This document shows, in pieces, positions 6,360 through 32,947 of a DNA stretch of 64,000 nucleotides. Made by a program: the position numbers and the translations under genes. Numbering within the stretch: the first letter of the stretch is position 1; each line of letters opens with the position of its first letter. The notes under the pieces are model-generated. The model was given only the letters and a program-made list of their open reading frames with translations, was not told where the DNA came from and searched no databases. The DNA is from Octopus sinensis. Lineage: Eukaryota. The DNA lies in assembly GCF_006345805.1 (NCBI RefSeq), contig NC_043017.1, forward strand, positions 24,552,001 to 24,616,000, in the 5' to 3' direction.

Positions 6360-6455
6360 TTCAGCAAAATTTTAGATTCAAATGAATGTGGTACTTAATT
6401 TAGATGCACCAGAATTCTGTATGGTGTTATCCATAAAAATCCGTGGGTGTTTATA

Positions 6456-7550: not shown

Positions 7551-7608
<58 letters not shown>

Positions 7609-13663: not shown

Positions 13664-13786
13664 GTTACTCTAATGAATGCAATGATACCGTTCCATGTGG
13701 TTGGAAAGCTTGGTGCAATAATAACTCCTGTAGCTGCCTTAACAACAACTCAGTTTTGCATGACAACAAAAGAGATTGCAGAAAAG
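13664..13786 (+). CDS. Receptor-like gene A, exon: Cys-rich EGF/EB-like module (GYSNECNDTVPCGWKAWCNNNSCSCLNNNSVLHDNKRDCRK)
   Basis: Polypyrimidine acceptor ...ttctttTAG|GT at 13663/4 and donor AAG|gtacgt at 13786/7. 123 nt, phase 1-1, open frame with 6 Cys in EGF/EB-type spacing. Confidence 0.8.
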
Positions 13787-15010
13787 GTACGTTAACAGCA
13801 ACCTTCTACAATTTCTCTCACAAAGCCTCTGTTGTTTTGTTTCCAGATATATTTTTCTTTGTCTTGTTATGGGTGGAGGCAAGACAGCAAGCTGGCAGAA
13901 TTGCTAGCATGCTGGGCGAAATGCTTAGCAGTATTTCGTGTCTTTACATTCTGAGTTCAAATTCCGCCAAGGTCAACTTTGCCTTTCATCCTTTGAGGGT
14001 CGATAGATTAAGTACCAGTTGAACTCAAAATGTAAAGACAGACCAAATACCAATAAGCATTTCGCCCGGTGTGCTAACATTTCTACCAGCTCACCACCTT
14101 CTTCCGCTATATTATATAACGCTCTACAATACTATACTGCACCCCACAGTACTATCTTGATATCCTATACTATAATGTTCTCCATACTATTTTGTTCTGT
14201 ACAATATTATATTGCACTTTACCATACTGTACAGCTGTATATACAGTAACATTCTGCCAGTTAGGTCATGTAGCATAAATTAGCAGAAAAGGAGAATTTT
14301 TGCAATGCAATAGTGACAGCTAGAAGGCCGGTCAGTTTGTACTAATATATCTTTTAGTAGATTGGACTTTTTGAGTCATACATTAAGTAGCATGAATAAG
14401 TAGAAAACAGTTCATTTACACACTTCTCTCTATTTCTCCCTTTCTCTTTATCTCTCTCAATCTCTCTTTTTTCCTCCTCCTGTCTCTTTCGCACACACAC
14501 ACACATTCGCAGTATGGAAAACAGATGTGTAATGATGATGATTGTGATGATAATGATGATGACGATGACATACATTCATATATACACATATGTATATACA
14601 CTCACACACACACACATATATATTTATATGTGCAACAACATATGTAAACAAACTTGTTTTGTCTTTTTTTGTTTTTGTTTTTGGAAGTGTCAAATGTGTA
14701 TCATACAGACAAGAAATTTAGTATTCTGAATGCAGTATAGCTATGAAAACAGCAGGAAGATTGTGTATTTTACCTTTATAAGATGGAAAAAGTGGTCAGC
14801 AAACAGCCACGGGACTCAATTTCACAGCTCTCAGATACTGGCTGAGTACTCCCATTTCCCTCTTTCTCTCTCTCTCTCAGCTTGATGGGTCTTCTTCTCA
14901 AGCACGACATAATGCCAAAGGTCTTGGTCATTACCTCCATGAGGCCCAACACTCAAAAGGAACTCAGCCACTTCGCCTCCATCAGATAAGATGGTCTTTA
15001 CATGCCAATG

Positions 15011-15330
15011 CTAGAGATTAATTGTAGATCCAATATAGTACCTAGTAGAATTGTGAAGTGTGTTATGAACCATGCATTTGTAGACAACATTAAACCTTCT
15101 GCAATGGGTTTGCAGCAGGCATCCATTCCTAGATTTGCAGTTGCAACCAGATCTATCTGGTCCATAGGAACTTGCTGTATGTGGATTGGATGCTGTACTA
15201 TTAGAGGGCATGCTAGGTTTTAGGGTAGTGTTCTTTGGCTTGCTCCCAGCATTATCACTATTATGTATGTCATTTGGACCTATAATTCTTTCCACTATAT
15301 TTCATTCAATACATTGCTCCAATAGCTGGG
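15011..15330 (-). mobile_element. Degenerate Penelope-like GIY-YIG endonuclease fragment
   Basis: Translation ...ERIIGPNDIHN...CNCKSRNGCLLQTHCRRFNVVYKCMV...YYIGST matches the PLE linker CNC..CPL..C..VVY..YIG pattern. Confidence 0.65.
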
Positions 15331-16359
15331 ATATCCCAGAAACAACTGTCAGAGATTATCTTTACCAGTTGGTACTATTTTTACCATTTGCTATGTAGCA
15401 AATTTTTTTAGATTGAATTCAATGAAATCTAATGTCCTTGTTCTGCCTTGACTAATTGTTTGCCTTTCCTCACTACTTTGACCTATATTTATATATATAT
15501 GTGTGTGTGTATGTATATATATGTGGTGTGTGTGTGTATATATATATATTTATCTATGTATATGTGTGTATGTATGTATATGTGTGTGTGTGTGAGTGTG
15601 TATAGTCATATATGTGTGTTTGAGAGTGAAAGAAAATCTGTGTCTATGTATCTCAAACAAAGGTAATACATTTCTCTAAGCCTTCCTTTACTTTTGCATA
15701 ATTAGTGACATTTGATTAACCTTTCACAGCTTCTTTAATTATACTCATGTCTGGGAACTTTACTAGTATTACTAGGATATGGCAGGTCAACCCATTCTTT
15801 TCAATTACTGCAAAACACTCTACCTGTTTGAATTAATTTTTCTCAAACTAAAACTACTCTACAAGTTCTTGTCACATTATCATTCACTCCTCCACTCCTT
15901 TTTGTTTTCGTTATTTTTTGTTTGTTTTTAATTAAAAAATGCACTGAATATTCATTATGACCATTTTTTTTATAAAGGATCTTTAAGTAAAAACACCATC
16001 TAAAAGTCCCCAATGCAATCTTTTACCTTTTTTTTTAAATCTTTTACTTGTTTCAGTCATTTGATTGCAGCCATGCAAGGGGACTGCCTTAAAGGGTTTT
16101 TAATCAAACAAATCAACCCCAAGATTTATTTTTTTAAAGCCTTGTACTTATTCTGTCGGTCTCTTTTGCCAAACTACTAACTTACGAGACATAAATACAC
16201 TAACTGCAGTTGTCAAGCAGTGGTGGGAGACAAACATTGACAGAAAGATCCATACACAAAGATATATGCATATATAGTTGCTCCCATAAATTCTAAAATA
16301 AAATTTAGAATTTACAGAGGGTCACATTTGGGAACAAAAAAGTGACAATGCAGACATAC

Positions 16360-16407
<48 letters not shown>

Positions 16408-16816
16408 TCATCATCATTATCGTTTAACATCCGTTTTCCATGCTAGCATGGGTTGGACGGTTCAACCAGGGTCTGGGAAGCCAGGAGGCTGTGCCGGTTT
16501 TCTTTTGTTGGTCCAAGGCTATAGTAGAAGACACTTGCTCAAGGTGTCACACTGTGGGAATAAACCCAGAGCCATGTGGCTAGGAACCAAGCTTCTTACC
16601 ACATAGCCATGCCTGCACCTATGCAATAATTAGAATAATTAGAAACATGTTAAGTTGCTGTACATGGCTTTTCTTTTGAATACTGAACAAGTTTTTTTTC
16701 TCTTTTTTGCATGAGAAAAAAATATGAATTGTATACGTAATTGTACAGAAAAATCAGCATTTGTATTAACAATTTCTTTATTTGACTATTTTCTCTCTCT
16801 TTTTTTTTTTTTACAG

Positions 16817-16874
16817 ATGGATGTGATCATATATCGAATTGCCTAGAATGTAATGCTGAAAATAAATGCATTCG
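16817..16874 (+). CDS. Gene A exon: start of a furin-like Cys-rich repeat (DGCDHISNCLECNAENKCIR)
   Basis: Long poly-T acceptor ttacag|AT, donor CG|gtatat, phase 1-2. C-x5-C-x2-C-x5-C pattern. Confidence 0.8.
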
Positions 16875-17009
16875 GTATATTGACGGAAATTTTATACTAA
16901 TTCATCATTCATAACATAAAACTTGCTACTTTCTTATCAGTCGATTGCCATGTCTTTTGAAAGTTGATGTGTTAGGCAGTAAATCACATTGAGACTATTT
17001 TTAGACAGC

Positions 17010-17475
17010 TGTGTGTGTGTACATGTGTGTGTGTGTGTGTACAAGTGTGTGTACATGTGTGTGTGTATGTGTACATGTGTGTGCGTGTGTACATGTGTGT
17101 GTGTACATGTGTATGTGTACATGTGTGTGTACATGTGTGTGTGTACATGTGTGTGTGTACATGTGTGTGTGTACATGTGTGTGTGTACATGTGTGTGCGT
17201 GTGTACATGTGTATGTGTACATGTGTGTGTACATGTGTGTGTGTACATGTGTGTGTGTGTACATGTGTGTATATACATGTGTGTGTGTGTACATGTGTGT
17301 GTGTACATGTGTACGTGTACATGTGTGTGTGTACATGTGTGTGTACATGTGTGTGTGCACATGTGTGTGTGCACATGTGTGTGTGCACATGTGTGTGTGC
17401 ACATGTGTGTGTGCACATGTGTGTGTGCACATGTGTGTGTGCACATGTGTGCGTGTGTGTGTGCGTGAGTGTATG
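17010..17475. repeat. (TG)n-TACA/CACA compound minisatellite
   Basis: Units of gtgtgt(gt)acat, 10-14 bp. Confidence 0.95.
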
Positions 17476-17595
17476 TGGTGGGGGTGTACCGCGTAATCAT
17501 ACCCAACCTTGCGAGATTTATTCATTCTTAGAATGGATATAAAATACAATCACATTATATCTGGTTGGGATAAGTTGCTTTAACCCTTTCATTGC

Positions 17596-18012
17596 CATTT
17601 GAGAGAAATGTTGTACCTAAGAAGCATCAGTTGTTCTGTGCAAGAGAGACGATTGCGCTGGTATGGTCATGTGGCGAGAATGGATGAAGATAGGTGTGTG
17701 AGAAAGTGCCAATCCCTAGCAGTTGAGGGAACCCGTGGAAGAGGTAGACCCAGGAAAACCTGGGACGAAGTGGTGAAGCACGACCTTCGGACGTTAGGTC
17801 TCACCATGGAAATGACTAGAGACCGAGACCTATGGAAGTATGCTGTGCGTGAGAAGACCCGGCAAGACTAGTGAAGCCATAAATCCGTGGCCCCTACCTG
17901 GGACGTAGTCAGTCCACCTGTGCATACCTTCCTTCTTGTGACACTTGTGAAGACCTGTTGAGGCAAGTGAGAATCGAATCGAATCAAATCAAATCAAATC
18001 GAACCAAATCAA
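17596..18012 (+). mobile_element. Young RTE LINE 3' end with (AAATC)n tail
   Basis: ERRLRWYGHVARMDEDRCV...GRGRPRKTWDEVV...DRDLW, with an intact 3' UTR. Confidence 0.9.
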
Positions 18013-18432
18013 AATAGATGAACATCAATGGAATTTGTATCCTTGTGGTACCAGTGCCGGTGGCACATAAGAAAACCATCCGAACGTGATCGTAGCCAGT
18101 ACCGCAACGACTGGCCTCCGTGCTGAGGGCACGTAACAAACACCATCCGAGCGTGGCCGTCCGCCAGCCCCGTCTGGCACCTGTGTCGGTGGTACATAAA
18201 AAACACCATCCGAGCGTGGCCGTCTGCCAGCCTCGTCTGGCACCTGTGTCGGTGGCACATAAAATCACCCACTACACTCTCGGAGTGGTTGGCGTTAGGA
18301 AGGGCATCCAGCTGTAGAAACACTGCCAGATCTGACTGGCCTGGTGCAGCCTTCGGGCTTGCCAGACCCCAGTTGAACCGTCCAACCCATGCTAGCATGG
18401 AAAGCGGACGTTAAACGATGATGATGATGATG
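18013..18432 (+). mobile_element. SINE-like element with internal about 60-bp tandem repeats and a (GAT)n tail
   Basis: The unit caccatccgagcgtggccgtc...ggtggcacat is repeated. Relatives lie at about 6640-6940 (-), 12170-12480 and 24390-24600. Confidence 0.7.
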
Positions 18433-19071
18433 ATGATATATACGATGGGCTTCTTTCAGTTTCCGTCTACCAAATTCACTCACAAGGCTTAGGTCAGCCC
18501 GAGGCTATAGTAGAAGACACTTGCCCAAAGTGCCGCGCAGTGGGACTGAACCCGGAACCATGTGGTTGGTAAGCAAGCTACTTACCACACAGCCACTCCT
18601 GCGCCTATAGTATTAAAAAGGATTAAAAAGATGATGAAAAATCCTCAATTAGTCTGGGAGTGTTGATCCATTTATAATTCTTGGATCTAAGCCATCCAGA
18701 AGATGACTCAAGTTGAACGGCATGGAAAAAACATAAAAAAAACAAAACAAATATAGAACCTAAAATAAAATTTTACTCTTAAACTTTTTATGGAATTTTT
18801 TCTCTTTTCCAAAATTCTGTTGTGTGATAAGAAGTTTGCTTCCCAAACACATGGTTCTGGGTTCAGTCCCATTGCATGGCATCTTGGGCAAGTGTCTTCC
18901 ATAGACCCTGGCTGACCTAAGCCTTGTGAGTGAAATTGGTAGGTGGAAACTGGAAGAAGCCCATCATGTATGTGTGTGTGTGTATGTATATATATAAGGA
19001 TATTACTATTAATAATTTACAATAATATCAGTGACTAGCATGCGTAAAAGAATCATAAAAGCAAAATTATC

Positions 19072-19324
19072 AATTAATATTGAAGGGTACCACTTGTAGC
19101 ACCAGCATGCTAAAGATAGCAGTCAAAACTACTCAAAACCACAGTTTTCATTTGTACACAAGAGTGAAATGAAGGGAACGGGCAGTAAAATTCTAAGGCC
19201 CTGTACCATAGACTCCCATTCCCTCGATTTCGCCTTTGTGTACAAGGGAAACTGTGGTTTTGAGTTATTTTCATTGCTTTCTTTAGCATACTGGTGCTAC
19301 AAGTGGCATCCTTCATTATTAATT
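19072..19324. repeat. Foldback/MITE-like inverted repeat (about 90-bp arms, about 75-nt spacer)
   Basis: aattaatattgaagggtaccacttgtagcaccag...gtacacaa vs ttgtgtac...ctggtgctacaagtggcatccttcattattaatt. Confidence 0.75.
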
Positions 19325-19509
19325 TTTACATATATATGGCGCAGGAGTGGCTGTGTGGTAAGTAGCTTGTTTACCAACCACATGGTTCTGGGTTCAGTCC
19401 CACTGCGTGGCACCTTGGGGAAAGTGTCTTCTACTATAGCCTTGGGCCGGCCAAAGCCTTGTGAGTGGATTTGGTAGACGGAAACTGAAAGAAGCCTGTC
19501 GTATATATG

Positions 19510-19540
<31 letters not shown>

Positions 19541-19727
19541 TTGTGTCTGTGTTTGTCCCCCTAGCATTGCTTGACAACCGTTACTTAGCGGTTCGGCAAA
19601 AGAGGCCGATAGAATAAGTACTGGGCTTACAAAAGAATAAGCCCTGGGGTCGAGTTGCTCGATTAAAAAGGCGGTGCTCCAGCATGGCCGCAGTCAAATG
19701 ACTGAAACAAGTAAAAGAGTAAAACAG

Positions 19728-19760
<33 letters not shown>

Positions 19761-21388
19761 TAAGGGAGTTCAAAAGGGGTCTCAGGGAGTAGCGTCCCTC
19801 CTTCCTGAGCTAGTTTGCCACCACATTTCTTAAAAGTTGTGGTAGAGGCTTTGGTCTCGGGACCATTTATGTCTAGAAACTGAGGCTGAAGGTAAGCAAG
19901 AGCATGTTCTCCATAGAAAATGATACAATATTTGGCATTCTAACAAAACAACCATGTTAAGTTGGATATAGAGATTGCTTTTTGATATAAAACTACATTA
20001 TGCTATATACCCTTCTTTTCTTTTTAAGAAGAAAGGATGTTATTTAAAGATTTGGCTGCTATTCTTAGTCAATTGGACAAACAAAACATTCTCTTCAGTA
20101 ATGATATGAACATCATAACTCTTAAAATCAATAGATGAATCATACAGTGATAGACATCTGATAACAAAAATAAAAAAAAAGGGGGGGGATCAAGCAGTTA
20201 GTTTTGGTTATTGCAATAACATGTGATAAATAAAGACAAATGTATAGATTGATGCCACATTTTATTAGTTTTCATTTTGTTGAAGCTTTGTTGTGTTGAT
20301 GGCCATAAAAAGTGTGTTACAGCAGTTAAGCAACAGCAAGTTGTATCCAATGTATTAAGTAGATAGATGTTTAAACTTAGTAAATGGCTCAGCCATTAGC
20401 AGCAAACAGCAAATGCCACAGATTGATAAATTAGAATTTTCTTTGTATATTGTATTGGGTGTACTTATTTATTTTATACTATTGATATGAAGGTGCATGG
20501 CTTAGTGGTTAGGGGTATTCAGCTCACAATCGTTAGGTGGTGGGTTCAATTCCCAGTGGTATGTTGTGTCCTTGAGCAAGACACTTTATTTTACGTTGCT
20601 CCTGTCCACCCAACTGGCGAAAATGAGTTGTGCCTGTAATTCAAAGGACCAGCCTTGTCACATTATGTGTCACACTGAATCTGAAAGTATGTGTGTCTGT
20701 GGAGTACTCAGCCACTTGCTTGTTAATTTCATGAACAAGCCATTCCATTGATCAAATCAGTGGAGGAGACTATTGATATGATTTTAAACTACATTCAGTT
20801 GTAGGACCCTGGTTTAGTACTTCTAAGGTCTTTGAAGAATTATGGAACTCCCTCTTAGTCACTATTGTTCTCAGGTCGACTCTCTGCGCCAGTGTAGTAG
20901 CACCTGTCAGCATCCCATCAATGGATTAATTAACTTATTGGGGCTTGCCTACCTATACATGTAAAGACTAGATCTGGTGGAATCTGTGAAAGAAACCTTT
21001 GTGGTTCAATGAAGGGGAAGGTGACTGCAGCAATGCATTGTAGAGTAGAGGGAGCAAGGTGAGGCTAGGTGATCCACTGCATCCATCTCCATCCCTAGTT
21101 GTCTTGACTCGGATTTGCCACTGTGAAGTCAGTGAAATTATAGTCATGGCAGATACTGGTACCATGCAACTGGCACCCATGCTGGTGGTACGTAAAAGTA
21201 CCCATTACACTCTTGGAGTGGTTAGCATTAAGATGTGCATCCAGCCATAGAAACCAGGCCAAATCAGACTGGAGTCTGGTACAACCCCTCAGCTTACAAG
21301 CTCTAGTCAAACTGTCCAAGTCATGCCAGTATGGACAACAGACATTAAATGTTGGTGATAATGATGATGATGAGTCAGAAAACAGCAC

Positions 21389-21600
21389 AGCTCCCATGAC
21401 TTTCGGAAACATTTTTTCACGCTCAGGGTTGCTGAAGTGTGGAATAAACTGCCTGCATCAGTTGTTGACTGCCATGACACTGCATCCTTTAAGGCCCTCA
21501 TGCTTCCCGAAATCTGTCGAAACTACACCTGATTATATATACACTTTAGATGAGTTGTAGTGCACCTGAGCACTGTACACAATTATTATTATTATTATTA
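21389..21600 (+). mobile_element. CR1/L2-type LINE 3' end with (ATT)n tail
   Basis: RKHFFTLRVAEVWNKLPASVV...FKAL. Confidence 0.8.
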
Positions 21601-21825
21601 TGATGAAAAGTTTAGGTTGACTATAAATTTTTATGCTCTCTAAATGTCAGATTATAAGGAAGGAAGTATTAAAGACTAAAAAATAAAAAATAAAAGTACC
21701 AATCGAGCCCTGGGGTCAATGTAACTGACTTATCTCCCCCACCCCCACCTCGAAATTGCTGGCCCTGTGCCAAAATAGGAAAACATTAATATCAACACCC
21801 TTATTGGCTTTTTCTCTTTCTATAG

Positions 21826-21929
21826 CTGTGTTAATTTTATCGACGAAACTACTCATACCTGTTTGGACAGCTGTAACGGAGTTTCTCAAGTTTCTCTGCA
21901 CGGACCTCTGCAGGGTATTCTTTGTAATG
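21826..21929 (+). CDS. Gene A exon: rest of the furin-like repeat (CVNFIDETTHTCLDSCNGVSQVSLHGPLQGILCN)
   Basis: Acceptor tctttctatag|C, donor AATG|gtaagt. Phase 2-1 matches the previous exon and completes the C..C.......C...C pattern. Confidence 0.85.
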
Positions 21930-22399
21930 GTAAGTGATTGACTTTGTTTTTTTTTGTTTTTTTCATCATATATTCCCAGGCCTGTTCTGACCAGACAGAC
22001 GCACGATTAAAGCCTTGAGTTATCAAGAACAATGTAGAGCCTACTGAGAAAGCATTCAAATGATTTTGGATGCAAAAAAAGATGACCAGTGGTGTCTATA
22101 GGATGACGCTTGGACACAGGCCTAGGCTTGACCGACCCACGTTGGGTCACCTTACTAAGGGTGTAAGGATGCAAGGCTCAAAAATAACCAGTAATTCCAA
22201 GTTACAATACTGATCGTTGTGTCCACATATTGCAACTGTTTGTCTATGTTGAACTGGTTCAATAAAGATTCACAGCAAATATTCAATCTGTACACAAATG
22301 GTTTCTCAGATTTTAAAAGTTATCAAATGAATTAGCAATCATTATTTGAGGCAGATTTGGTAATTATTCGTAATGGGTTGTTTGTGTATTTGGAGTGTG

Positions 22400-22557
22400 T
22401 GTGTGTATATATATATATAATATATATGTGTGTGTGTGTGTGCATATATGTATGTTTATATATATGTACATTATATATATATTTATATATATATATATGT
22501 GTGTGTATATATATGTATATATGTATATATATATATATATGTGTATATATATATGTA

Positions 22558-22610
<53 letters not shown>

Positions 22611-22850
22611 TGTGTGTGTATATATGTATATATGTATATATATATATATATGTGTATATATATGTATATATGTATATATATATATAATATATATATATAT
22701 ATATGCATATATGTATGTTTATATATATGTACATTATATATATATATATATATATGTGTGTGTATATATATATATATGTGTTGTGTGTGTGTGTATAAAT
22801 ATATATATATATATATACATGTATGTGTGTGTGTGTGCGTGCGTGCATGT
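22400..22850. repeat. (TA)n/(TG)n microsatellite field (similar fields at about 1720-2190, 5540-5900, 51000-51330, 52020-52260, 52630-53250)
   Basis: Direct inspection. These fields explain the YI/CV/HT-rich ORFs in the track. Confidence 0.95.
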
Positions 22851-23022
22851 CCTTAAGTTTATAAAAATGTGCTATGCAATACAATATAATTGATTTTTAA
22901 AGATTTTCCTATATATGTTTCTGATTATCTAATTGTAATCTACCAGCCAAAATCTCAGTTGTTACATCATTTTTATAATGATTTTTAAAAATGTCTGTAT
23001 TTCTTTGTTTTTCTTTGTCTAG

Positions 23023-23134
23023 AATCTCTAATCAACACGAGTCTATGGATCGGTTTAGGGGCTGGTTGTGGTGCTGGCATCATACTCTGCCTGCTGGTTC
23101 TACTGGCTGTGTTTGCCTGCAAAAAAAAGAAAAA
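23023..23134 (+). CDS. Gene A exon: transmembrane helix plus basic stop-transfer (ESLINTSLWIGLGAGCGAGIILCLLVLLAVFACKKKK)
   Basis: Acceptor ttgtctag|AA, donor AAAA|gtaagg, phase 1-2. About 24 hydrophobic residues followed by poly-Lys. Confidence 0.9.
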
Positions 23135-23439: not shown

Positions 23440-23760
23440 TTTCTTGAGAAGACCAATGTCGCAGTCTCTGCAGCACTAACTCTCATCCCTGTCTTGCAGT
23501 ATTCAACAGCAGATCCATTCAGTGTATGCCGGAAATCACCTGATGAGCCAAGGAGCACCATGTTGTCATCAAATATAATCAGCTTACTCGGATCAGTTGT
23601 GATACTACCACTTACACAATGGCTGTGTATGTCAATCCAGTTCATAAAAAATATGAAAAGGAGAGGTAACAATACACCTCCTTGTCAAAGTCCAACACCC
23701 ATGTTGAAAGGTTTTGACTTGGTATTATTTACCTGAACACAAACATCTGTTTTGGCATGG
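23440..23760 (-). mobile_element. Degenerate non-LTR reverse transcriptase fragment
   Basis: QGGVLLPLLFIFFM...LIIFDDNMVLLGSS...TGMRVS resembles RT motifs QG..LSPLLF and FADD. Confidence 0.7.
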
Positions 23761-24840
23761 TTTCTATAACTGGATACCCTTCTTAATGCCAACCACTTCA
23801 CAGAATGAACTGGGTGCTTTTACGCAGTTCCAGGACAGGTACTTTTACATGGCTCCGGCACAGGTGCTTTTTATATGGCATCAGCACCCTTGAGCTCACA
23901 AGATTAGGGATCACTCAGCTGAAGAGGGATGCAGGGGACATGCCTGTATTTAAGGACATTGTTTTAATGTTAATTTTTTTATGCTTGCATGAATCAGATG
24001 GACTTTGATGAGAGATTTTCTATGGCTAGAAGCTCTTCTTGTTGGCAATCCTCCCATGTTTTCATGAATGAGAGGAAACGAATGACACTAATGCTCACTT
24101 ACAACTATCATGTGATGTCCAGACAAAGAGTTGCTTCCAAACCACATGGTTCTGGGCTCAGCTCCACTGTGTGGAATCTTACACTATAGCCTCTAGCCTT
24201 GGGTCAACCAAAGCCTTATGAGTGAATTTGGTAGACAGGCACTGAAAGAAGTTCATCATATATATGTGTGTTTGTGTTTGTCATGCATCTCAGTGGTTCT
24301 CAACTAGGGTCCACATGACCCTTAGGGGTCCACATAAGGTTTTGTTAAAGTTTATATGCAATAGATCAATTATACTTCTACAACGCCGTTGCCAGTACCG
24401 CCTGACTGGCCCGCATGCTGGTGGTACATAAAAGCACCTACTACACTCTCAGAGTGGATGGTGTTAGGAAGGGCATCCAGCTGTAGAAACTCTGCCAGAT
24501 CAGATTGGAGCCTAGTGCAGCCATCTGGTTCACCAGACCTCAGTCAAATCGTCCAACCCATGCTAGCATGGAAAGCGGACGTTAAACGATGATGATGATG
24601 ACAACACACAAAATATTTCAACAATTTTTTTTCATACAGTTCCTAAATATTTGATTATAAAAAATATAAGATTTTTTAAACATTGGATGGTTATGAGGAT
24701 CCACCTGAGTAAATAAGAATCAAAGGAATCCATAGGTGTAGAACAGTTGGGAAACACTGATTTGTCTATCATTTCTGTTAATAGTCTTTCTTTTTTTATT
24801 GTACTTTGTGATAACACCTTTTTTTATATATCAATAACAG

Positions 24841-24904
24841 GCAAAGTGCAAACTTTCAAGAAAACCTAAAAAGCAGACATCTTCCAAATGAAAAAATTAG
24901 GAAG
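24841..24904 (+). CDS. Gene A exon: juxtamembrane segment (QSANFQENLKSRHLPNEKIRK)
   Basis: Acceptor aataacag|G, donor AAG|gtaagc, phase 2-0, open frame. Confidence 0.8.
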
Positions 24905-25205
24905 GTAAGCCATTTTTTTTTTCCTCTAGAAGTTTGCATTTTTTGAGAAGTTTCTAAATTGGTGTATTTCATGGATTTATTTTAAAGATATTCTTTATTG
25001 AATTTTTTTTTTTCAAACTTATATTATGCATTTCATAAACAATAGTTGCTTCCCAACCACATGATTCCAGGTTCAGTCCCACTGCAAAGCATTTTGGACA
25101 AGTGTCTTCTACTATAGCCTTGGGACAACTAAAACATTTTACATGGATTTGGTTGGCAGCAACAGAAAGAAGCCCATCATACACGTTTTGTGTATGTGTG
25201 TGTGT

Positions 25206-25236
<31 letters not shown>

Positions 25237-25639
25237 GGTGTGGCTATGTGGCAAGAATTTTGCTTCCCAACCATATGGTTCTAGATTGTGTGGCATCTTG
25301 GGCGGTTGTCTTCTATTTTAACTTCTGACCAACCAAAGCCTTGTAAGTGGATTTAGTTGATGGAAACTGAAAGAGGCCCATCCTATGTGTGTATGTGTGT
25401 GTGCATGCATGCCTTTAAGTTTGTCCACCATCAACACTTAACAACCAGTGTTGGTTTGTTTATGTTCCCATAACTGAGTGGCACAACAAAAAGAAGCAGA
25501 TAGAATAAGTACCAGGCTTTAAAAATAATTACAAGTACTTAGGTTGACTTGCTTGACAAAAAAACTTCAAGGTGCTGCCCTAGCACAGCCGCAGTCCAAT
25601 GACTCAAAATAAAAGCATTTCTTGCAATAGGTCTTTAAC

Positions 25640-25967
25640 AGCCCAATCATTATTTTAGTATCACGTGATCACGTGACCGACCAGGCCATCAGATGTTGCT
25701 ACACATCGCTGGTCACATTGCATTTCGCGTAGGTTTAGCCTTCGAATGACGCCACCCCACTGGCAAAGCGAGTAGGCCAACAGAAGAAAGAGTGAGAGAA
25801 AATTGTGGTAAAAGAGTACAGCAGGGATCACCACCACTCCCTGCCGGAGCCTCTTGGAGATTGAGGTGTTTTCGCTCAATAAACACTCACAACACCTGGT
25901 CTGGGAATCGAAACCATGATCCTATGACCGTGAGTCCGCTGCCCTAACCACTGGGTCATTGCACCTC
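25640..25967 (-). mobile_element. tRNA-derived SINE, third family (also about 3826-4110 -)
   Basis: Head ggaggtgcaatgacccagtggttagggcagcggactc...ggtttcgattcc. Confidence 0.7.
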
Positions 25968-26097
25968 CTATTTCAACACACATGTATGTACATATGTATG
26001 TACATACAGATAGATAGATTGATACGCATACACACACACGCATACATAATTGTTCTGACTTTTTGTTAATTAGACATGTCTGTCTTTCTATTTTCAG

Positions 26098-26125
26098 ATA
26101 CCAGTGTTCGACAATAAGGGCTATG
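26098..26125 (+). CDS. Gene A 28-nt exon (IPVFDNKGY)
   Basis: Acceptor ctattttcag|ATA, donor ATG|gtaagt, phase 0-1. Confidence 0.8.
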
Positions 26126-27172
26126 GTAAGTATTTCTACAGAAATATTTAAATCCAATAATTGCAAAAAAAAAAAAAATCAATATTTGTCTTCTTTCCTC
26201 ATTACCAGTTAAAGGTTCCTTCCTGAGCTTTAGACTCGTAAGGCAGGTTTACCGGATTCTGTGGCAGCTATTTCATCCCCACTACCTGGGCAGAATACCA
26301 GTTCGTCAGAGGATTACTCATCGTGGAATGAAGTGCTTTGCTCAAGAACACAAAGCATTGCCTGGTCCAGGAATTGAAAACGCAATCTTATGATCATGAA
26401 TGCCTCCATTACCAGTAGACATTATAACGCTGTGTAACACGATTTTTGTCCTTGGGTTGCAACTGTTATTTCCTATGTGCTTACCCTAGAAAGTATGAAA
26501 AGGCTAATATTTCCTTCAAACTTTGCTTTTATTACATTTATTCAAATTCCTAAGAATCCCTTTCAACACATGGCTGTGATGTTCCCCTATTACTCCTGCT
26601 CATGATCAGAGATCAGCCGCTAAGCGACATACTCAAATGGTTATGGTCAAGCAACCAATAAGCAGATTTATGGTGTTCAGCAGAATATTTGCTATAATGA
26701 TATTTCTGCTTCAGCATCTCAGCACTGAATCTGTCTGAAATGTAATGGAAAATAGGTCAGTTTGAAAACATTGATGTCCAGGTCAGAAAAGCAAAGTTTG
26801 AAGGGAATGGTTGTCATTTCTTTTGATTTCTAGATGGAAACAAATAGGAAATAACACTTACCGACCGAAGACAAAATTAAAATTTTGTTACGCAGTCTAA
26901 TTTAATATCAAACCAGTGAGAGAACCTTGGCTTAGTAGAAATAGCAGTCATGCCTCCTTTAAATCACACTCACACTCTGCCCACTGAAAAAAAAGGAAGG
27001 TCCACTGGCAATAAACATATGGTCATAGATATACAAAAAGAGGAGAAAAATACGACAATGATGAAAGGTGCTTTCTTGTAACACTTATCTAACCTTCACA
27101 CATTTATTTATTTCTCCTTCATTCTCTCTCTCTATCTATCTATCTATCTATTTATCTGTATATATATGTATG

Positions 27173-27226
<54 letters not shown>

Positions 27227-27242
27227 GAGAGAGAGAGATAGA

Positions 27243-27274
<32 letters not shown>

Positions 27275-28433
27275 TAGATAGATAGATAGATAGATTGATT
27301 GATTGATTGATTAAAGCAGAAAAAAAAAGGCAAACAGTTTAGCAAGACTTGACAAGGACATTTAATGTAGCTATATAGTGAAAGGTTTGATAGTCTCCAA
27401 CAGCTGTTTCTAGGATATCTCAGCTATTCAAATACAAAATCACATTTTCAACTGCAGTTGAAACCGGAATGTTAATGGCATGCCAACTTAAGCACTCAGA
27501 GCTCATACCTATTATTTTGAGTCACCTTGATGAAAAATCCTTGTATCTTATACATATATATATCTGTGTGTGCAATATTGGACACACCTACACAAGGTGT
27601 GTGTTTTGCTAGTTCATGGGTAGGCTGTGCTTATCAGCGTAAGAGAATATATTCTCATCAATGCACCTGGTGTCGAAACATCTGGAAGTCATTGACAAGG
27701 GAGATAACTTGCATCAGGTTCTATTCAGAAGCAATGGATATTGATGTTTCGTGTTTGTTGTGACTTGTCAACACCACATGCCCGGACAAGGCCCAATGCA
27801 AGCTAAATCACTGTCTACAACTAAATGCAAAAGAGTGTAAGAACCATCTGCTGGTATGTCCCAACATTTTATACCACAGAAAAAAATTCAAATATATATT
27901 AGAAGTAGCTCAAGGGATATAAACGATATTGAACACATATACACAAGGTAGGTTTTGCTAGTGTGTGTATAGGCCGTGCTTATGACTTTCAGGTGTTTTA
28001 ACACCAGGTGCATTAATGAAAATATATTCTCTATCTTTCTATCTATCTATCTATCTTCAATCACACTGGCCTCTTTGACCTTCAAAATTTTTATATTGTG
28101 AATCTTTTTCTTGTTAGAAGCAAAAAGAAAAGGGGAAAAAAATCCTTCAACAATGGAAAGAAGTTCTTTGCTACTTTCATCTTACCTTTACACTTTTATT
28201 TCTTCCTCATTTTTTTTCTCTCCCTTTTTCTGCAATCACGTCGGCTTCTTCAACCACCACTACTACAACCACCACCACCGCCGCCGCCACCACCCCCACC
28301 ACAACCACCACCGCTGCTGCCGCCGCCGCCACTACCACCACCACCACCACCACCACCGACGACAACGACGACAACAACTCCGACACCAATGCAACTACGA
28401 ACTCACCAGAAACGGAAGAGGTCAACATTTCAG

Positions 28434-28578
28434 ATAGCTGCGTCATTGATGAACAAGTCTACTTTTACAAACTCGAGAAAATGCGACCTCACAAAAAAAC
28501 CCTAGAAGAGTTGCTAAGTCAGGTGCGGACACGTTTGCGAGCTATGAATTCAGATGATACACGAGTACCTACTTACAA
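28434..28578 (+). CDS. Gene A exon: first half of helical cytoplasmic domain (DSCVIDEQVYFYKLEKMRPHKKTLEELLSQVRTRLRAMNSDDTRVPTYK); 5' boundary uncertain (28410 is an alternative)
   Basis: Donor TACAA|gtacgt gives phase 2, matching the next exon. Two in-phase acceptors (ccag|28410, tttcag|28434). Confidence 0.75.
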
Positions 28579-29150
28579 GTACGTACATTAATTCCTTTAC
28601 ACTCACCAACTATTTCTGCTATTATCATGTGCTTCCTACTCTAAATTCTTTCAGAAAACTCCTGTTCTTTATCTTTATGATTGCTTTTTTAAAATCCAAT
28701 TCCCTTTTTTTTTTACTTCCATTATAAAAACGTTTCCATTGTGTTAATCTCATTCTTCTATGAATGAATGTTAATTAATTTTACTTCTGTATTTTCTATA
28801 TTTTTACTGTGTATGTAGGTATGTATGTATGCAAAGGTGGCGAGCTGGCAGAATTGTTAGCACGCCAGGCGAATTGCTTGGTTGTATTTCATCTACCTTG
28901 ATGATCTGAGTTCAAATTCTGCCGAAGTTGACTTTGCCTTTCATCCTTCTGGGATCAATAAAATAAGTACAATGTGATGCTCCAGAATGAGCGCAGTCCA
29001 ATGACTGAAACAAGCAAAATATAACAACCGTATACGAGGGGGTGCTGTAAGGTTCCTGGTTTTGGGTAAAAGAAAATACAGGCGGATCAGTTAATTAAAT
29101 AGTTTCCATCTACCAAAGATGCTTGCTGAAGGTGCTATGCAACGGGATTT

Positions 29151-29360
29151 TATGAGGGGTGCTAGAAAGTTCCTGGCTTTTTGAAAATAAGAAAATACAG
29201 GGGATCAGTTAATTATGATTTTATTCAACATATTCCCCTCTCAGATTCACACACTTATGGCAGTTTTTCTTAGCCCTGTAAAAGAATTTGGAAGGTTGAG
29301 CCTCCAATCAGGCTTTTTGTGACAATTTTAAAGCCAGGAACTTTTCAGCACCCCCTCGTA
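29151..29360. mobile_element. Mariner-type MITE (TA...TA, about 30-bp TIR); an extra left end lies at 29031-29100
   Basis: ta[c/t]gaggggtgct..aagttcctggcttt ... aaagccaggaacttttcagcaccccctcgta. Confidence 0.8.
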
Positions 29361-29514
29361 TATTTGCACATATATACTCTTTACTCTTTTACTTGTTTCA
29401 GTCATTTGACTGCGGCCATGCTGGAGCACCGCCTTTAGTTGAGCAAATCGACCCCGGGACTTATTCTTTGTAAGCCCAGTACTTATTCTATCGGCCTCTT
29501 TTGCCGAACCGCTA

Positions 29515-29690
29515 TACCGTTGGCGATTTTCTTTCCTCTGTCTTCCCTTCTCCTATGTTTCCGATGAAGAGCTCCGCTCGAAACGTTAAACCCTCCTTCT
29601 TTCCTTCTTTCCTGAGCGTCCAATAATACTATATTTGTTCCACATCCTCACGTTGTTGTGTTTTTTTGTGCTTTCTTGTTTGGATTAACT

Positions 29691-29695
<5 letters not shown>
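29515..29695 (+). mobile_element. Penelope-like terminal-repeat fragment
   Basis: Close copy of 7153-7340. Confidence 0.55.
29557..29591 (+). ncRNA. Minimal hammerhead motif with a variant core (CCGATGA), same family as 7208
   Basis: Identical to 7208-7242 apart from U4>C. Confidence 0.5.
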
Positions 29696-29742
<47 letters not shown>

Positions 29743-29837
29743 ATATGCATCATCACCTGTAAATTTATATCTAATGTGTAAATTTATATGTGGCTCTTTT
29801 TTTCTTTTTTCTTTTTTTTTTTGTTATTTTCCTCCAG

Positions 29838-29973
29838 GGGTGTAATCAACCAACTGTGTAGGGTCCTTGGACTTTTGAATAAAAATGAGCTCAACAACAG
29901 TGTTCCAGCTGATGCTTTAGGGCTTCTTGAATGGGCTAAACAGATGCTCAATGACTACTATGAACTGAGGCAG
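29838..29973 (+). CDS. Gene A exon: second half of helical domain (GVINQLCRVLGLLNKNELNNSVPADALGLLEWAKQMLNDYYELRQ)
   Basis: Acceptor ttttcctccag|G, donor CAG|gtcagt, phase 2-0, amphipathic helical pattern. Confidence 0.85.
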
Positions 29974-31202
29974 GTCAGTATCTTTGTGTGTTTTTCATCT
30001 TTTAATTGTATCAGTCCATTGAACTGTGGCCATGCTGGAGCACCACTTTGAAGAGTTTTAGTCTGGCAAATTGACTCCAGTCCACTGGGTTTTTTTCTTT
30101 CTTTTAAGTCTGGTACTTATTCTATCAGGCTGTTTTGTTGAACCGCTAAGTTAGTGGAATGTAAACAAACTGACATCGGTCATCAAGTGCTGGTGCGGAA
30201 CAAACACAAAGATGCACACACACACACACACACACACATACACGCATATATATTTATGTGTAACTGAGAAGACACGACAACTAAAGTGAGATTGCAGCCA
30301 TGGCCAATGCCAGTGTTGCATGTCCAGCCCATTTAAAAGTACCCTTGATGCATCAGGTGATATGCTATGCTTGAGAAGAGCTCTTGAATCAAGTAAAACC
30401 AAAATCGTAGCTGTAGCCAGTGCCCCCTGATTGGCTCCCGTTCCTGTGGCATGTAAAACCCATCATCTGAACATGGTCAGTGCTAGTGATTCCAATTGCA
30501 TACTGGGGTCAATTTAATGAACTGGCCCCCTCCCACAAAATTTTGGGCCTTGTGCCTAGAGTAGAAAAGTATATTTAAGCATTTCATCATCATGTTTCCA
30601 GTGAAATACTCAGCGTTTATGTTAGAGTTAATTTTGAAAATAATCAAGAATTCTAATGGATTCTGTAAAACAACAAATGTTTCCATTATTATGCTCTTAT
30701 AGTCTGCCCATATAGCTCAGTCAGTAGAGTATCGGACTATTTTAAGATGGCAAACTGGCAGAATCATTAGCACACCTGGCGAAATGCTTAACGGTATTTT
30801 GTCTACTGCTATGATCTGAGTTAAAATGCCGCCAAAGTCAACTATGCTTTTCGTCCTTTTGGGGTCGATAAGTTATCTACCAGTGAAACACTGGGAGTCA
30901 ATGTAATTGACTAGTTCCCTCCCCCAAAAATATCAGGCCTTATGCCTTTAGTAGAAAGGATTATTATGCTTTTGCTCTAGGTGGCAAGTTAGCAAACTCA
31001 TTACCCTGCCAGATAAAATGCTTAGTGGTATTTCCTCTGTAATTTTACAATTTGAGTTCAAATTCCACCAAGGCTGACTTTACCATTGATCTCTTTGAAT
31101 ATTTTGGCCGGATATAGCCAGTTTGAATACTAAAGGGCTAAACCTTACACTTTAGTCCATTTTTTTAAATATATTTTTTTTCTTTATCTTTTTTGTTTAC
31201 AG

Positions 31203-31621
31203 CAAGATTCTTCTACTTCTTCTGAGGCACCACGTGCTGAGATTTCATCCGTTGATGTCCAGCCGATATATGCAATTCCCCATGATAGTTGTCAAGATGC
31301 TGTCCGTATAGCTACAGACAATAAACCCTCAACGTTAGCCAACCATAGTGCTCCAAAAGCAGTAGGAACTGCTGATAGCGGATACTACAGTAGTGTATCG
31401 ATTCCTTATTTCAACAGTCATCAACCAAACAAACCGAGCAAGCCGCCAGCCTATTTAAAGAAAAATAAGCGCCATCTGAATGGCTATCATGTAAACGACA
31501 ATAATGACCGTGCAAACAACATTTATACATGTGCCAGCTCATACAGTGAAAGAAGTGGTAAATGTATGTCAACGTTTATCAAAGACGACATTTCTTACGT
31601 CAGCGAATGTTCTGAAAGAAG
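31203..31621 (+). CDS. Gene A exon: 139-codon Ser/Pro/Tyr-rich cytoplasmic tail
   Basis: Acceptor tttgtttacag|CAA, donor AG|gtaatt, phase 0-2. I translated it codon by codon and found no stop across 419 nt. Confidence 0.85.
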
Positions 31622-32287
31622 GTAATTGTTTTTTTACCATCTCGTCTTCTCCTATCTTTCTTATATTTATGTTGATGCTACTCCTGCTGTTGTTGTTTGT
31701 TTCTATTATTCTTGCTGTTGGTCCAACAATTATTTTTATAAAAACCAAATACCCTATTCTGTTTTGTTTCCCTATCAGAACCACCTCACTAATATTACTG
31801 GTGCCTACAAGAAATACATTGCCATTGTACTCTCTCTCCTCTCTCTCCCTCTCCCTCCCCCTCTCTCTCTGAGTTCAAATTCCACCGAGGTCAGCTTTGC
31901 TTTTCGTGGCTTCTAAAGCTGGATGCCCTTCCTAATACCAGCCATTTTACAGAGTGTCGTGGGTGCTTTTATGTGGCACCAGCCTTTGGCAGTCAGATTA
32001 TTTTTATTGATTGTAATATTTATTTATTCACATTCTTTTGAATTAATCATGCATTATCCCATAGCTTTGAGATTTTGATGATGCATCTGCTTATTTCTTA
32101 GAATGATATTGTGGGATAGTTATGAGAGGCCAGATCTGGTCAGTTTGAACATTGGACAGGTAGAATATTTAGGCCAGATATGGCCAGTTTAAGTGCTAAA
32201 GGGCTTCTTCGTGTTATATTGTTGTGAGGATATACAGATAATCTGACAACAAACAAACCACCCGACAGTATATAGTCTAACAATTGA

Positions 32288-32611
32288 CTGTTTGATGGCA
32301 ATTTAACAACAGCCAGTTTGACAGCGCACTATCTGGCAACTGACAATTTGACCACAGGCTATCTGGTAACGGTCACTTTGATAACTGACTATCAGGCAAT
32401 AGACAATTTAACAACAAACCATATAACAGAAAACCATCTAGCAACTGATAATTTGACAACAGGCTATCTAGCAAAAGACCATTTGGCAACAGATCACCTG
32501 GTAGCAGACAGCTTGACAACTGACCATCTGGCAATAGATAATAGGAGAACAGACTATTTCGATAATTGCCTGTCTAACAACAGACAAATCAACAAAGAAA
32601 GACTTTTCTAA
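32288..32611 (+). repeat. Degenerate 15-bp repeat with an open pentapeptide-repeat frame
   Basis: LATDN-LTTGY-LVTVT-LITDY..., 107 codons without a stop. Confidence 0.7.
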
Positions 32612-32868
32612 TAATATTTTCTACATTTTGCAAGGCAGCAAGCTGACAGAATTCTGCCAGGGTCGATTTAGCCTTTCATCCTTTTGGGGTTGATTAAATA
32701 ATTACCAGTTGATCACTGGGGTCAATTTAATCACCTCGGCTCCTCTTGGGGCCTTATACTGAAATTTGAAACCAATATTTTTCATTTTGCTATATATTTT
32801 TGCTTGTTTTGTTGTTGTTTTTTTTCCCTCATATTTTGTCATTTCTCTTACATTTTCTCTCTCCCTAG

Positions 32869-32947
32869 TTCCAACAGCAGCGCTGGGGCTTCACCAGAAG
32901 GGCTTCCATTCAACATGAAGGATGCAACTGAACCCATCGAAGTTTGA
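32869..32947 (+). CDS. Gene A terminal exon (SNSSAGASPEGLPFNMKDATEPIEV*)
   Basis: Acceptor ttttctctctccctag|T is phase 2 as required. TGA at 32945-32947. Confidence 0.8.

What the first reader, a model, noticed from the sequence alone, without database searches (positions are those of the whole stretch)
13664..32947. Unnamed single-pass signalling receptor built from ten small exons, mostly invisible to the ORF track
Seen: ten exons join with fully consistent phases (1-1, 1-2, 2-1, 1-2, 2-0, 0-1, 1-2, 2-0, 0-2, 2-stop) into about 422 aa. The product has an EGF/EB-like module, one furin-like Cys-rich repeat, a TM helix with KKKKK, and an about 290-aa cytoplasmic part with no catalytic domain. 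Inference: the very small ectodomain and large motif-rich tail suggest a co-receptor or adaptor-type membrane protein. I cannot assign it to a named family. Furin-like repeats are used by R-spondins to bind ZNRF3/RNF43/LGR, so a membrane-tethered ligand or decoy role is one hypothesis.
Basis: partly seen in the sequence, partly recalled or inferred. Interest (0 to 1): 0.75.

Follow-up and report, generated by a model that had tools for sequence, protein, structure and literature searches.

The report
Octopus homologue of fly T48
The ten small exons are a real octopus gene for a single-pass membrane protein, and it belongs to the family of Drosophila T48, a scaffold that helps cells constrict during gastrulation and that the papers I read report only from winged insects.

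Summary
They join into 1292 nt (429 codons plus a split first codon). The exons are conserved in O. bimaculoides and Argonauta, while the introns are not. A cDNA contig from another cephalopod runs colinear across all nine junctions. The signal-peptide exon lies outside the window, 47.7 kb upstream of E1.

The domain reading is also right: an EGF-like module, one furin-like (FU) repeat, a TM helix with KKKKK, and a non-catalytic tail. The protein is not family-less. A mollusc profile finds 114 relatives, including insect T48. Mollusc profile against dipteran T48 profile gives 99.7% probability and E 4e-26, over the FU repeat, the TM helix and a confidently predicted three-helix cytoplasmic domain. 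The family reaches sponges and choanoflagellates.

The likely mechanism, by analogy with T48, is that the C-terminal -EPIEV and the helical domain recruit PDZ proteins (RhoGEF2 in flies) to the membrane. This is inferred, not shown. The R-spondin-like decoy idea is not supported. Verdict: a new, currently unnamed or misnamed, member of a known kind.

The parts
13664..13786 (+). Exon 1 of the ten (phase 1->1). It encodes residues 33-73 (O. vulgaris P0002 numbering): the end of the signal-peptide region and an EGF-like six-Cys module (C38, C44, C50, C55, C57, C71).
   Evidence: AG/GT sites. tblastn to P0001-P0003. AF2 pLDDT about 94 with beta hairpins. cEGF and EB Pfam hits in a few relatives only.
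16817..16874 (+). Exon 2 (1->2). First half of the furin-like (FU) Cys-rich repeat (C76, C82, C85, C91).
   Evidence: Profile match to R-spondin FU repeats.
21826..21929 (+). Exon 3 (2->1). Second half of the FU repeat (C94, C105, C109, C126).
   Evidence: Top-scoring candidate in the phase-constrained splice search.. 100% match to the O. sinensis protein.
23023..23134 (+). Exon 4 (1->2). Transmembrane helix (about residues 134-158) followed by the basic stop-transfer KKKK; the fifth K is completed by exon 5.
   Evidence: AF2 helix 133-168.
24841..24904 (+). Exon 5 (2->0). Juxtamembrane linker QSANFQENLKSRHLPNEKIRK.
   Evidence: 100% identical in O. bimaculoides.
26098..26125 (+). Exon 6 (0->1). 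A 28-nt micro-exon encoding IPVFDNKGY, a motif conserved across molluscs.
   Evidence: 100% identical in O. bimaculoides and 89% in Argonauta.
28410..28578 (+). Exon 7 (1->2). Linker and helix 1 (residues 210-240) of the conserved cytoplasmic three-helix domain, ending in RVPTYK.
   Evidence: AF2 pLDDT 96-98. Aligned to T48.
28233..28409 (+). Optional upstream extension of exon 7, used only by RefSeq isoform X1 (P0001). It is an (ACC/GCC)n microsatellite coding poly-Thr/Ala, and its acceptor dinucleotide is TG, not AG. This is a doubtful isoform.
   Evidence: Absent from O. vulgaris, O. bimaculoides, Argonauta and the cDNA contig.
29838..29973 (+). Exon 8 (2->0). Helix 2 (248-266) and most of helix 3 (278-302). 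It holds the family's only invariant residue, W284, and the P275-x-D277 motif.
   Evidence: 100% identical in O. bimaculoides.
31203..31621 (+). Exon 9 (0->2). Predicted disordered Ser/Asn-rich tail with short motifs conserved in molluscs: IYAIP (YxxP), DSGYYSS and ASSYSERS.
   Evidence: AF2 pLDDT below 50.
32869..32947 (+). Exon 10 (2->stop). C-terminus LPFNMKDATEPIEV-COOH, a PDZ-ligand-like end, with stop TGA at 32945-32947.
   Evidence: 61 of 67 family members of at least 250 aa end in L, V, F or I.

Best explanation
The ten exons are the last ten coding exons of a real, expressed octopus gene (O. sinensis CM016879.1; orthologue of O. bimaculoides LOC106882014). It encodes a type I single-pass membrane protein of the T48 family.

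Shown: the layout is signal peptide (exon outside the window), EGF-like module, one FU repeat, TM helix, a conserved three-helix cytoplasmic domain, a disordered tail with short linear motifs, and the C-terminus -EPIEV. The segment from the FU repeat through the TM helix to the three-helix domain is homologous to Drosophila T48.

Inferred: it works as T48 does, as a membrane-anchored scaffold rather than an enzyme. The free C-terminus would dock a PDZ domain. In flies that is the PDZ domain of RhoGEF2, an RGS-RhoGEF of the LARG/PDZ-RhoGEF type. Docking would concentrate a Rho activator at a defined membrane domain and raise local actomyosin contractility during epithelial shape change. The much more strongly conserved three-helix domain probably binds a second, still unknown, conserved partner. 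The small ectodomain may localise or gate the protein through an unknown ligand.
For: Gene reality:
- Canonical splice sites and phases.
- Conservation confined to the exons in O. bimaculoides and Argonauta.
- pN/pS of 0.29 for the ectodomain and 0.02 for the cytoplasmic part.
- A colinear cDNA contig in another cephalopod.

Family assignment:
- An exhaustive profile search from molluscs finds 114 relatives. They include proteins ending in RPQDEITTEL, such as P0036 (E 2.7e-13) and P0099, named 'uncharacterized protein T48 [Chelonus insularis]'.
- P0036 retrieves D. melanogaster T48, Q24548, at E 4e-92.
- hhalign of the mollusc profile against the dipteran T48 profile gives 99.7% probability and E 4.2e-26 over 194 columns.
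- Direct BLASTP of octopus against fly T48 gives E 4e-13.
- NCBI already uses the name 'FU domain-containing protein T48' for a mantis shrimp, a horseshoe crab and Rhodnius proteins that my profile also hit.

Structure:
- AF2 with a 55-sequence alignment gives pLDDT 94-97 for the EGF and FU modules and 96-98 for helices 210-240, 248-266 and 278-302. The tail is disordered.

Mechanism:
- T48 is a TM protein whose PDZ-binding motif is thought to bind the RhoGEF2 PDZ domain, acting in parallel with Fog/Cta (PMC11151099, PMC7054018, PMC6794076).
- 61 of 67 family members end in a hydrophobic residue, and many have E at position -1 as in -TTEL and -PIEV.
Against: - No functional or expression data for the octopus gene were available here.
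- The octopus C-terminus has Ile at position -2 (-P-I-E-V), whereas T48 has Thr (-T-T-E-L). The PDZ class differs, so the partner may not be an RGS-RhoGEF.
- The family's C-termini vary in class across phyla, and choanoflagellate members have no PDZ-type end. PDZ docking is therefore not the ancestral core function.
- Identity to fly T48 is only 23%, and the long tails are not alignable.
- Even in flies the role of the conserved helical domain and of the ectodomain is unknown.
- Foldseek found no structural relative for the helical domain.
Confidence: 0.6

Rival explanations
1. It is a T48 homologue, but RhoGEF coupling is an arthropod specialisation. In molluscs the protein would act mainly through the ancient three-helix domain and the mollusc-specific tail motifs (YxxP, DSGxxS-like, ASSYSxRS). 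Its class-II-like -EPIEV end would dock a different PDZ scaffold, for example polarity or junction proteins. That would make it a junction or polarity adaptor, or a phospho-regulated receptor, rather than a contractility switch.
For: - The helical domain is conserved from choanoflagellates to insects, while the C-terminal motif changes class and is absent in choanoflagellates.
- The mollusc tails carry their own invariant motifs that insects lack.
- pN/pS of 0.02 across the whole cytoplasmic part, including the disordered tail.
Against: - The only experimentally characterised member works with RhoGEF2.
- E at -1 with a hydrophobic residue at 0, and the LxFxxxD stretch before the end, are shared by molluscs and insects.
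- From my own knowledge, PDZ domains of the LARG/PDZ-RhoGEF type accept varied ligands.
Confidence: 0.3
2. One reading: the FU repeat makes it a membrane-tethered R-spondin-like ligand or decoy that engages ZNRF3/RNF43 or LGR receptors and modulates Wnt signalling.
For: The family profile's best matches among solved structures are the R-spondin-2 and R-spondin-1 FU repeats (9kb7_B, full-sequence E 2e-8). Pfam Furin-like_2 hits 5 of 55 members.
Against: - There is only one FU repeat, and it matches FU1 and FU2 equally weakly (each stretch at about E 1e-3).
- At the positions aligned to RSPO2 F105 and F109 the octopus has N86 and K90 (alignment; that these residues bind LGR is my own knowledge).
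- Pfam finds no TSP1 domain.
- The ectodomain is the fastest-evolving part, while the cytoplasmic domain is nearly frozen. That points to an intracellular function.
- The family occurs in choanoflagellates. That they lack the R-spondin/LGR/ZNRF3 axis is my own knowledge.
Confidence: 0.05
3. It is not a functional gene: a chance chain of open frames, a pseudogene or an annotation artefact.
For: The octopus protein has no Pfam, NCBIfam or PDB sequence hit on its own. One RefSeq isoform has a non-canonical acceptor and a spurious name.
Against: - Ten of ten canonical junctions with consistent phases.
- Conservation limited to the exons across octopods.
- Strong purifying selection.
- A spliced cDNA in a relative.
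- 114 homologues across animals.
- A confident AF2 fold.
Confidence: 0.02

Closest known systems
Drosophila melanogaster T48 (Transcript 48; UniProt Q24548; named 'FU domain-containing protein T48' in recent NCBI annotations)
   Same: Both are type I single-pass proteins. Both have one FU repeat directly before the TM helix, a basic stop-transfer, and a homologous three-helix cytoplasmic domain (LRP..FL.ML...R ... Y..V...L.R.L.LL ... P.D...L..WA...L..Y). Both have a disordered tail that ends in a hydrophobic PDZ-type C-terminus with Glu at -1. Profile-profile probability is 99.7%, E 4e-26.
   Different: The octopus protein has an extra N-terminal EGF-like module. That module is also present in sponges, annelids and a nemertean, and absent in arthropods (ranges). 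Its tail is unrelated and longer, with mollusc-specific motifs. Its C-terminus is -EPIEV rather than -ITTEL. Identity is only 23% over 218 residues. No functional data exist for it.
R-spondins (RSPO1-4)
   Same: They share the type of furin-like Cys-rich repeat. R-spondin FU repeats are the best hits of the family profile among solved structures.
   Different: R-spondins are secreted and have two FU repeats, a TSP1 domain and a basic tail. The octopus protein has one FU repeat, is membrane-anchored and has a large cytoplasmic part. At the positions of the LGR-binding Phe pair it has N86 and K90.
Plexin-B receptors (functional analogue only)
   Same: They are transmembrane proteins whose extreme C-terminus binds the PDZ domain of the RGS-RhoGEFs LARG and PDZ-RhoGEF and so raises RhoA activity (PMC2695464). 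This is the same logic as T48 with RhoGEF2.
   Different: They are unrelated in sequence and fold. Plexins have sema, PSI and IPT ectodomains and a GAP domain.

Membership tests
T48 family | Type I topology: N-terminal signal peptide and a single TM helix followed by basic residues. | tested here: met
   The signal-peptide exon (MALIRLQ...MFSSG) was found in the O. sinensis locus L004, 47.7 kb upstream of E1 and outside the window. The TM helix and KKKKK are in exon 4.
T48 family | One furin-like (FU) Cys-rich repeat immediately before the TM helix. | tested here: met
   An eight-Cys repeat in exons 2-3. It aligns to the T48 FU repeat and to R-spondin FU repeats. Furin-like_2 hits occur in relatives.
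T48 family | Conserved cytoplasmic helical domain (fly: DFMRQLNEMRPNAEYFLAMLNDTRRQIRKL...YRPIVRDLAKLLILLNRP...PPDWSRLYAWSEQALERYKP). | tested here: met
   hhalign gives 99.7% probability and E 4.2e-26. BLASTP gives E 4e-13. A domain HMM built from molluscs scores fly T48 at E 5.5e-13 and 15 other taxa at E 1.7e-10 or better. AF2 predicts three helices at pLDDT 96-98.
T48 family | C-terminal PDZ-binding motif (-ITTEL in insects). | tested here: inconclusive
   The octopus ends in -ATEPIEV. It has a hydrophobic last residue and Glu at -1 as in T48, but Ile rather than Thr at -2. 61 of 67 members end in L, V, F or I. Binding was not testable.
T48 family | Binds the RhoGEF2 PDZ domain and promotes apical RhoGEF2 and myosin accumulation. 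| not testable with these tools
   Known for Drosophila only (PMC11151099, PMC7054018).
T48 family | One-to-one orthology with insect T48, as opposed to an older paralogue. | not tested
No phylogeny was built.
R-spondin family | Secreted protein with two tandem FU repeats, a TSP1 domain and a basic C-terminus. | tested here: not met
   One FU repeat, a TM helix and no Pfam match to TSP1.
R-spondin family | LGR-binding Phe pair in FU2 (RSPO2 F105/F109; their role is my own knowledge). | tested here: not met
   In the alignment, CFSKDFC of RSPO2 corresponds to CNAENKC in octopus, so the two positions are N86 and K90.
EGF-like / EB module | Six Cys with C-x-C between the fourth and fifth, and a two-hairpin fold. 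| tested here: inconclusive
   The pattern C-x5-C-x5-C-x4-C-x-C-x13-C is present, and AF2 predicts hairpins at pLDDT about 94. The octopus protein has no Pfam hit. cEGF hits 3 and EB hits 2 of 55 relatives, below the curated cut-offs.

The most novel reading that the evidence does not exclude
T48 is not an invention of winged insects. It would be one lineage of an ancient receptor family that predates animals, built from an EGF/FU ectodomain, a TM helix and a three-helix domain not yet described in the papers I searched. The octopus protein and its sponge and choanoflagellate relatives would then be ligand-sensing switches that couple an extracellular cue to cortical contractility. The PDZ tail that binds RhoGEF would be a later metazoan add-on.
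Probability: 0.25. Interest if true: 0.8.

Novelty: new member of a known kind. Interest (0 to 1): 0.5.

Why it matters
T48 is a textbook component of Drosophila ventral-furrow formation. The papers I could read place its origin in winged insects. [quoted passage not shown]

Here an octopus gene, named 'uncharacterized' or wrongly 'dokA-like', turns out to be a T48-family member. Profile evidence extends the family to crustaceans, chelicerates, annelids, a nemertean, an echinoderm, a hemichordate, an octocoral, sponges and three choanoflagellates.

This does three things:
- It gives the octopus gene a testable function.
- It shows that the most conserved part of T48 is a three-helix domain nobody has studied, rather than the PDZ motif.
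- It opens non-insect systems for asking what T48's ectodomain senses.

It is not a new kind of system.

Tried and rejected
- **Death-domain idea for the cytoplasmic helical region.** Rejected. AF2 gives three helices, not six, and Foldseek against the PDB gives nothing significant. The best E is 1.5, and the occludin C-terminal three-helix bundle scores E 1.6.
- **Pfam, NCBIfam and PDB sequence searches with the octopus protein or the six-sequence profile.** No hits.
- **First AF2 run with six sequences.** Uninformative, pLDDT 41.
- **Search for the signal-peptide exon inside the window.** Absent. It was found upstream in L004.
- **My first guess for the exon 7/8 region (28438-28522 joined directly to exon 9).** Wrong. 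It was corrected with the annotated proteins.
- **Pfam on nine intronic or flanking ORFs.** Nothing useful.
- **Literature searches** for LOC106882014, 'FU domain-containing protein T48', and T48 homologues outside insects. No papers.
Full report
**What is in the sequence**

The window is eukaryotic, AT-rich and full of repeats. It is identical to Octopus sinensis chromosome CM016879.1 (GCA_006345805.1), positions 24,552,001-24,616,000.

I first read stop-free stretches and scored AG/GT sites under the stated phases. I then mapped annotated proteins back onto the window with tblastn.

The ten exons are 13664-13786, 16817-16874, 21826-21929, 23023-23134, 24841-24904, 26098-26125, 28410-28578, 29838-29973, 31203-31621 and 32869-32947. 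All acceptors are AG and all donors are GT. The exon lengths give exactly the phases 1-1, 1-2, 2-1, 1-2, 2-0, 0-1, 1-2, 2-0, 0-2, 2-stop. The joined 1292 nt encode 429 codons plus a split first codon.

**Is it real?**

- The product differs at one residue from the O. vulgaris protein and at eight from O. bimaculoides LOC106882014.
- Against O. bimaculoides, every exon aligns without gaps at 94-100% identity. The 150-nt flanks are 85-96% identical.
- Against Argonauta hians, DNA similarity begins and ends within a few bases of the splice sites for exons 5, 7, 8 and 10, and lies within or near the exon for the others. Exon 1 gave no hit.
- pN/pS between the two Octopus species is 0.29 for the ectodomain codons and 0.02 for the TM plus cytoplasmic codons.
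- Three contigs of 1.7-1.9 kb, assembled from separate sequencing runs of another cephalopod, carry an uninterrupted 461-aa reading frame. It is colinear with the octopus protein across all nine junctions. This is transcript-level support from a relative.

The ten exons are not the whole gene. The signal-peptide exon (MALIRLQAIPALLCHKNQFLIINLIILLMFSSG) is absent from the window. It lies 34.0 kb before the window's first base, which is 47.7 kb upstream of exon 1.

**Protein anatomy** (O. vulgaris P0002 numbering, 462 aa)

| Residues | Feature | Exons |
|---|---|---|
| 1-32 | Signal peptide | outside window |
| 38-71 | EGF-like six-Cys module | 1 |
| 76-126 | Eight-Cys furin-like (FU) repeat | 2-3 |
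| about 134-158 | TM helix, then KKKKK | 4 |
| 187-195 | Conserved IPVFDNKGY micro-exon motif | 6 |
| 210-240, 248-266, 278-302 | Three helices | 7-8, helix 3 ending in 9 |
| about 303-448 | Disordered Ser/Asn-rich tail with conserved IYAIP, DSGYYSS and ASSYSERS | 9-10 |
| 449-462 | C-terminus LPFNMKDATEPIEV | 10 |

With a 55-sequence alignment, AlphaFold2 gives pLDDT 94-97 for the EGF and FU modules and 96-98 for the three helices. The tail scores below 50.

**What family is it?**

The octopus protein alone hits nothing in Pfam, NCBIfam or the PDB sequences. The word-indexed search found only cephalopod orthologues and one scallop protein. The names were 'uncharacterized', 'hypothetical', or 'hybrid signal transduction protein dokA-like isoform X1' for O. 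sinensis. That name probably comes from the poly-Thr/Ala insert of that isoform.

An exhaustive HMMER search of 1.84 billion representatives with the six-sequence profile found 114 relatives at E up to 1e-3. Many end in RPQDEITTEL. Cluster look-ups named the following:
- 'uncharacterized protein T48 [Chelonus insularis]';
- 'FU domain-containing protein T48' in Oratosquilla, Tachypleus and Rhodnius;
- uncharacterised proteins from Haliotis, Lymnaea, Owenia, Capitella, Paralvinella, Lineus, Pollicipes, Macrobrachium, Scylla, Thrips, Saccoglossus, Acanthaster, Paramuricea, Amphimedon and Oscarella;
- proteins from the choanoflagellates Salpingoeca rosetta, Hartaetosiga gracilis and Didymoeca costata.

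One of the hits, P0036, whose closest relatives are Culex proteins, retrieves D. melanogaster T48 (Q24548) at E 4e-92 and 'Transcript 48 [Anopheles darlingi]'.

Direct tests agree:
- Mollusc profile against dipteran T48 profile: 99.7% probability, E 4.2e-26, 194 columns covering the FU repeat, the TM helix and the helical domain.
- Octopus against fly T48 by BLASTP: E 4e-13, 23% identity over 218 residues.
- Dipteran T48 profile against the Amphimedon protein: 99.1%, E 9e-19.
- Dipteran T48 profile against S. rosetta PTSG_04816: 96.6%, E 5.9e-10.
- An HMM of the mollusc helical domain alone scores 16 of 17 tested proteins from other taxa between E 6e-27 and E 1.7e-10 in a 17-sequence test. The horseshoe-crab protein P0257 was aligned but is missing from the score table.

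Among the proteins I could name, none was a vertebrate.

**The ectodomain**

The 55-sequence family profile matches R-spondin-2 and R-spondin-1 chains in the PDB. The best is 9kb7_B at a full-sequence E of 2e-8, and each FU repeat scores about E 1e-3 on its own. Pfam Furin-like_2 hits 5 of 55 members.

It is not evidence for R-spondin-like function, for four reasons:
- There is one repeat, not two.
- Pfam finds no TSP1 domain.
- CFSKDFC of RSPO2, which holds F105 and F109, aligns to CNAENKC in octopus. That this Phe pair binds LGR is my own knowledge.
- The ectodomain evolves about fifteen times faster, in pN/pS terms, than the cytoplasmic part.

The EGF module is present in sponge, annelid, nemertean and mollusc members. 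It is missing in arthropods and in Saccoglossus (matched query ranges). EGF plus FU is therefore probably the older ectodomain.

**How it most likely works**

[quoted passage not shown] It acts in parallel with Fog/Concertina to produce apical myosin activation and mesoderm invagination (PMC11151099, PMC7054018, PMC6794076). RhoGEF2 belongs to the LARG/PDZ-RhoGEF group. Plexin-B, LPA receptors and CD44 also use the PDZ domains of that group to raise RhoA activity (PMC2695464).

By homology I infer that the octopus protein is a membrane scaffold of the same kind. The inference is weakest at the C-terminus. -P-I-E-V shares the hydrophobic end and Glu at -1 with -T-T-E-L, but it has Ile at -2.

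Across the family, 61 of 67 proteins of at least 250 aa end in L, V, F or I. The class of motif varies, and the three choanoflagellate proteins have no such end. The invariant part is the three-helix domain. W284 is the only invariant column in 55 sequences, and L258, L265, P275, D277, L281 and L289 are near-invariant. I therefore expect a second conserved partner. Foldseek found no solved relative of this domain.

**Comparison with what is known, and novelty**

The gene is already modelled in RefSeq, so the locus itself is not new. Its family assignment is. The papers I could read place t48 in winged insects. [quoted passage not shown] I found no paper on T48 homologues outside insects.

NCBI's recent product name for crustacean and chelicerate proteins shows that annotation pipelines have already moved past insects. 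Molluscs, other phyla and choanoflagellates are not so named. I rate this a new member of a known kind, with a wider family range than the literature states.

**Limits**

- There are no expression or binding data.
- Orthology versus older paralogy was not resolved by a tree.
- Most of the 114 hits are unnamed assemblies.
- The species of the cDNA contigs is unknown.
- The roles assigned to YxxP and DSGxxS-like motifs rest on my own knowledge and are only leads.

Noticed in passing
window 28233-28409 (+): RefSeq isoform X1 (P0001, 'hybrid signal transduction protein dokA-like') needs an acceptor at 28232|28233, where the dinucleotide is TG, not AG. The extra 177 nt are an (ACC/GCC)n microsatellite coding poly-Thr/Ala. 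The insert is absent from O. vulgaris, O. bimaculoides, Argonauta and the cDNA contig. The isoform, and probably the name, look spurious.
   Followed up: yes
upstream of the window (locus L004 3001; 34.0 kb before window base 1): The signal-peptide exon of the gene lies 47.7 kb upstream of exon 1. The first intron is therefore very long, and window bases 1-13663 are intron.
   Followed up: yes
exons 1-3 versus exons 4-10 (13664-21929 versus 23023-32947): Between O. sinensis and O. bimaculoides, 7 of the 8 amino-acid changes fall in the ectodomain (pN/pS 0.29). The TM helix, helical domain and the predicted disordered tail have pN/pS 0.02. The 'disordered' tail is thus strongly constrained.
   Followed up: yes
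window 31203-31621 (exon 9): Short motifs conserved in molluscs sit in the tail. IYAIP fits a YxxP phosphotyrosine-type motif. DSGYYS fits the DSGxxS pattern of beta-TrCP phosphodegrons (in cephalopods; DTG or TSG in other molluscs). ASSYSERS is also conserved. The functional reading is my own knowledge and is untested.
   Followed up: partly
window-wide, e.g. 13887-14015, 18436-18605, 18821-18994, 19338-19528, 25043-25181, 29377-29514, 30782-30929, 54064-54245, 56586-56844: More than 30 stretches of about 100-440 bp match four or more other places in the window on either strand. They look like interspersed, SINE-like repeats filling the introns and flanks.
   Followed up: partly
window 16937-17549, 22357-22893, 51000-53080: Long TG/CA-rich and TA-rich microsatellite blocks give the longest 'ORFs' in the window (C/V/H/T or I/Y repeats). 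They are not coding.
   Followed up: no
window 17584-17868 (+) and 23376-23672 (-): Stop-free stretches inside introns 2 and 4 resemble, by eye, the C-terminal part of non-LTR retrotransposon ORF2 proteins. Pfam gave no meaningful hit, so this remains a lead only.
   Followed up: partly
family level (proteins P0025, P0034, P0063, P0071, P0111): The T48-type three-helix domain sits behind a Cys-rich ectodomain and a TM helix in two sponges and three choanoflagellates. UniProt labels the S. rosetta protein only as 'TNFR-Cys domain-containing'.
   Followed up: partly
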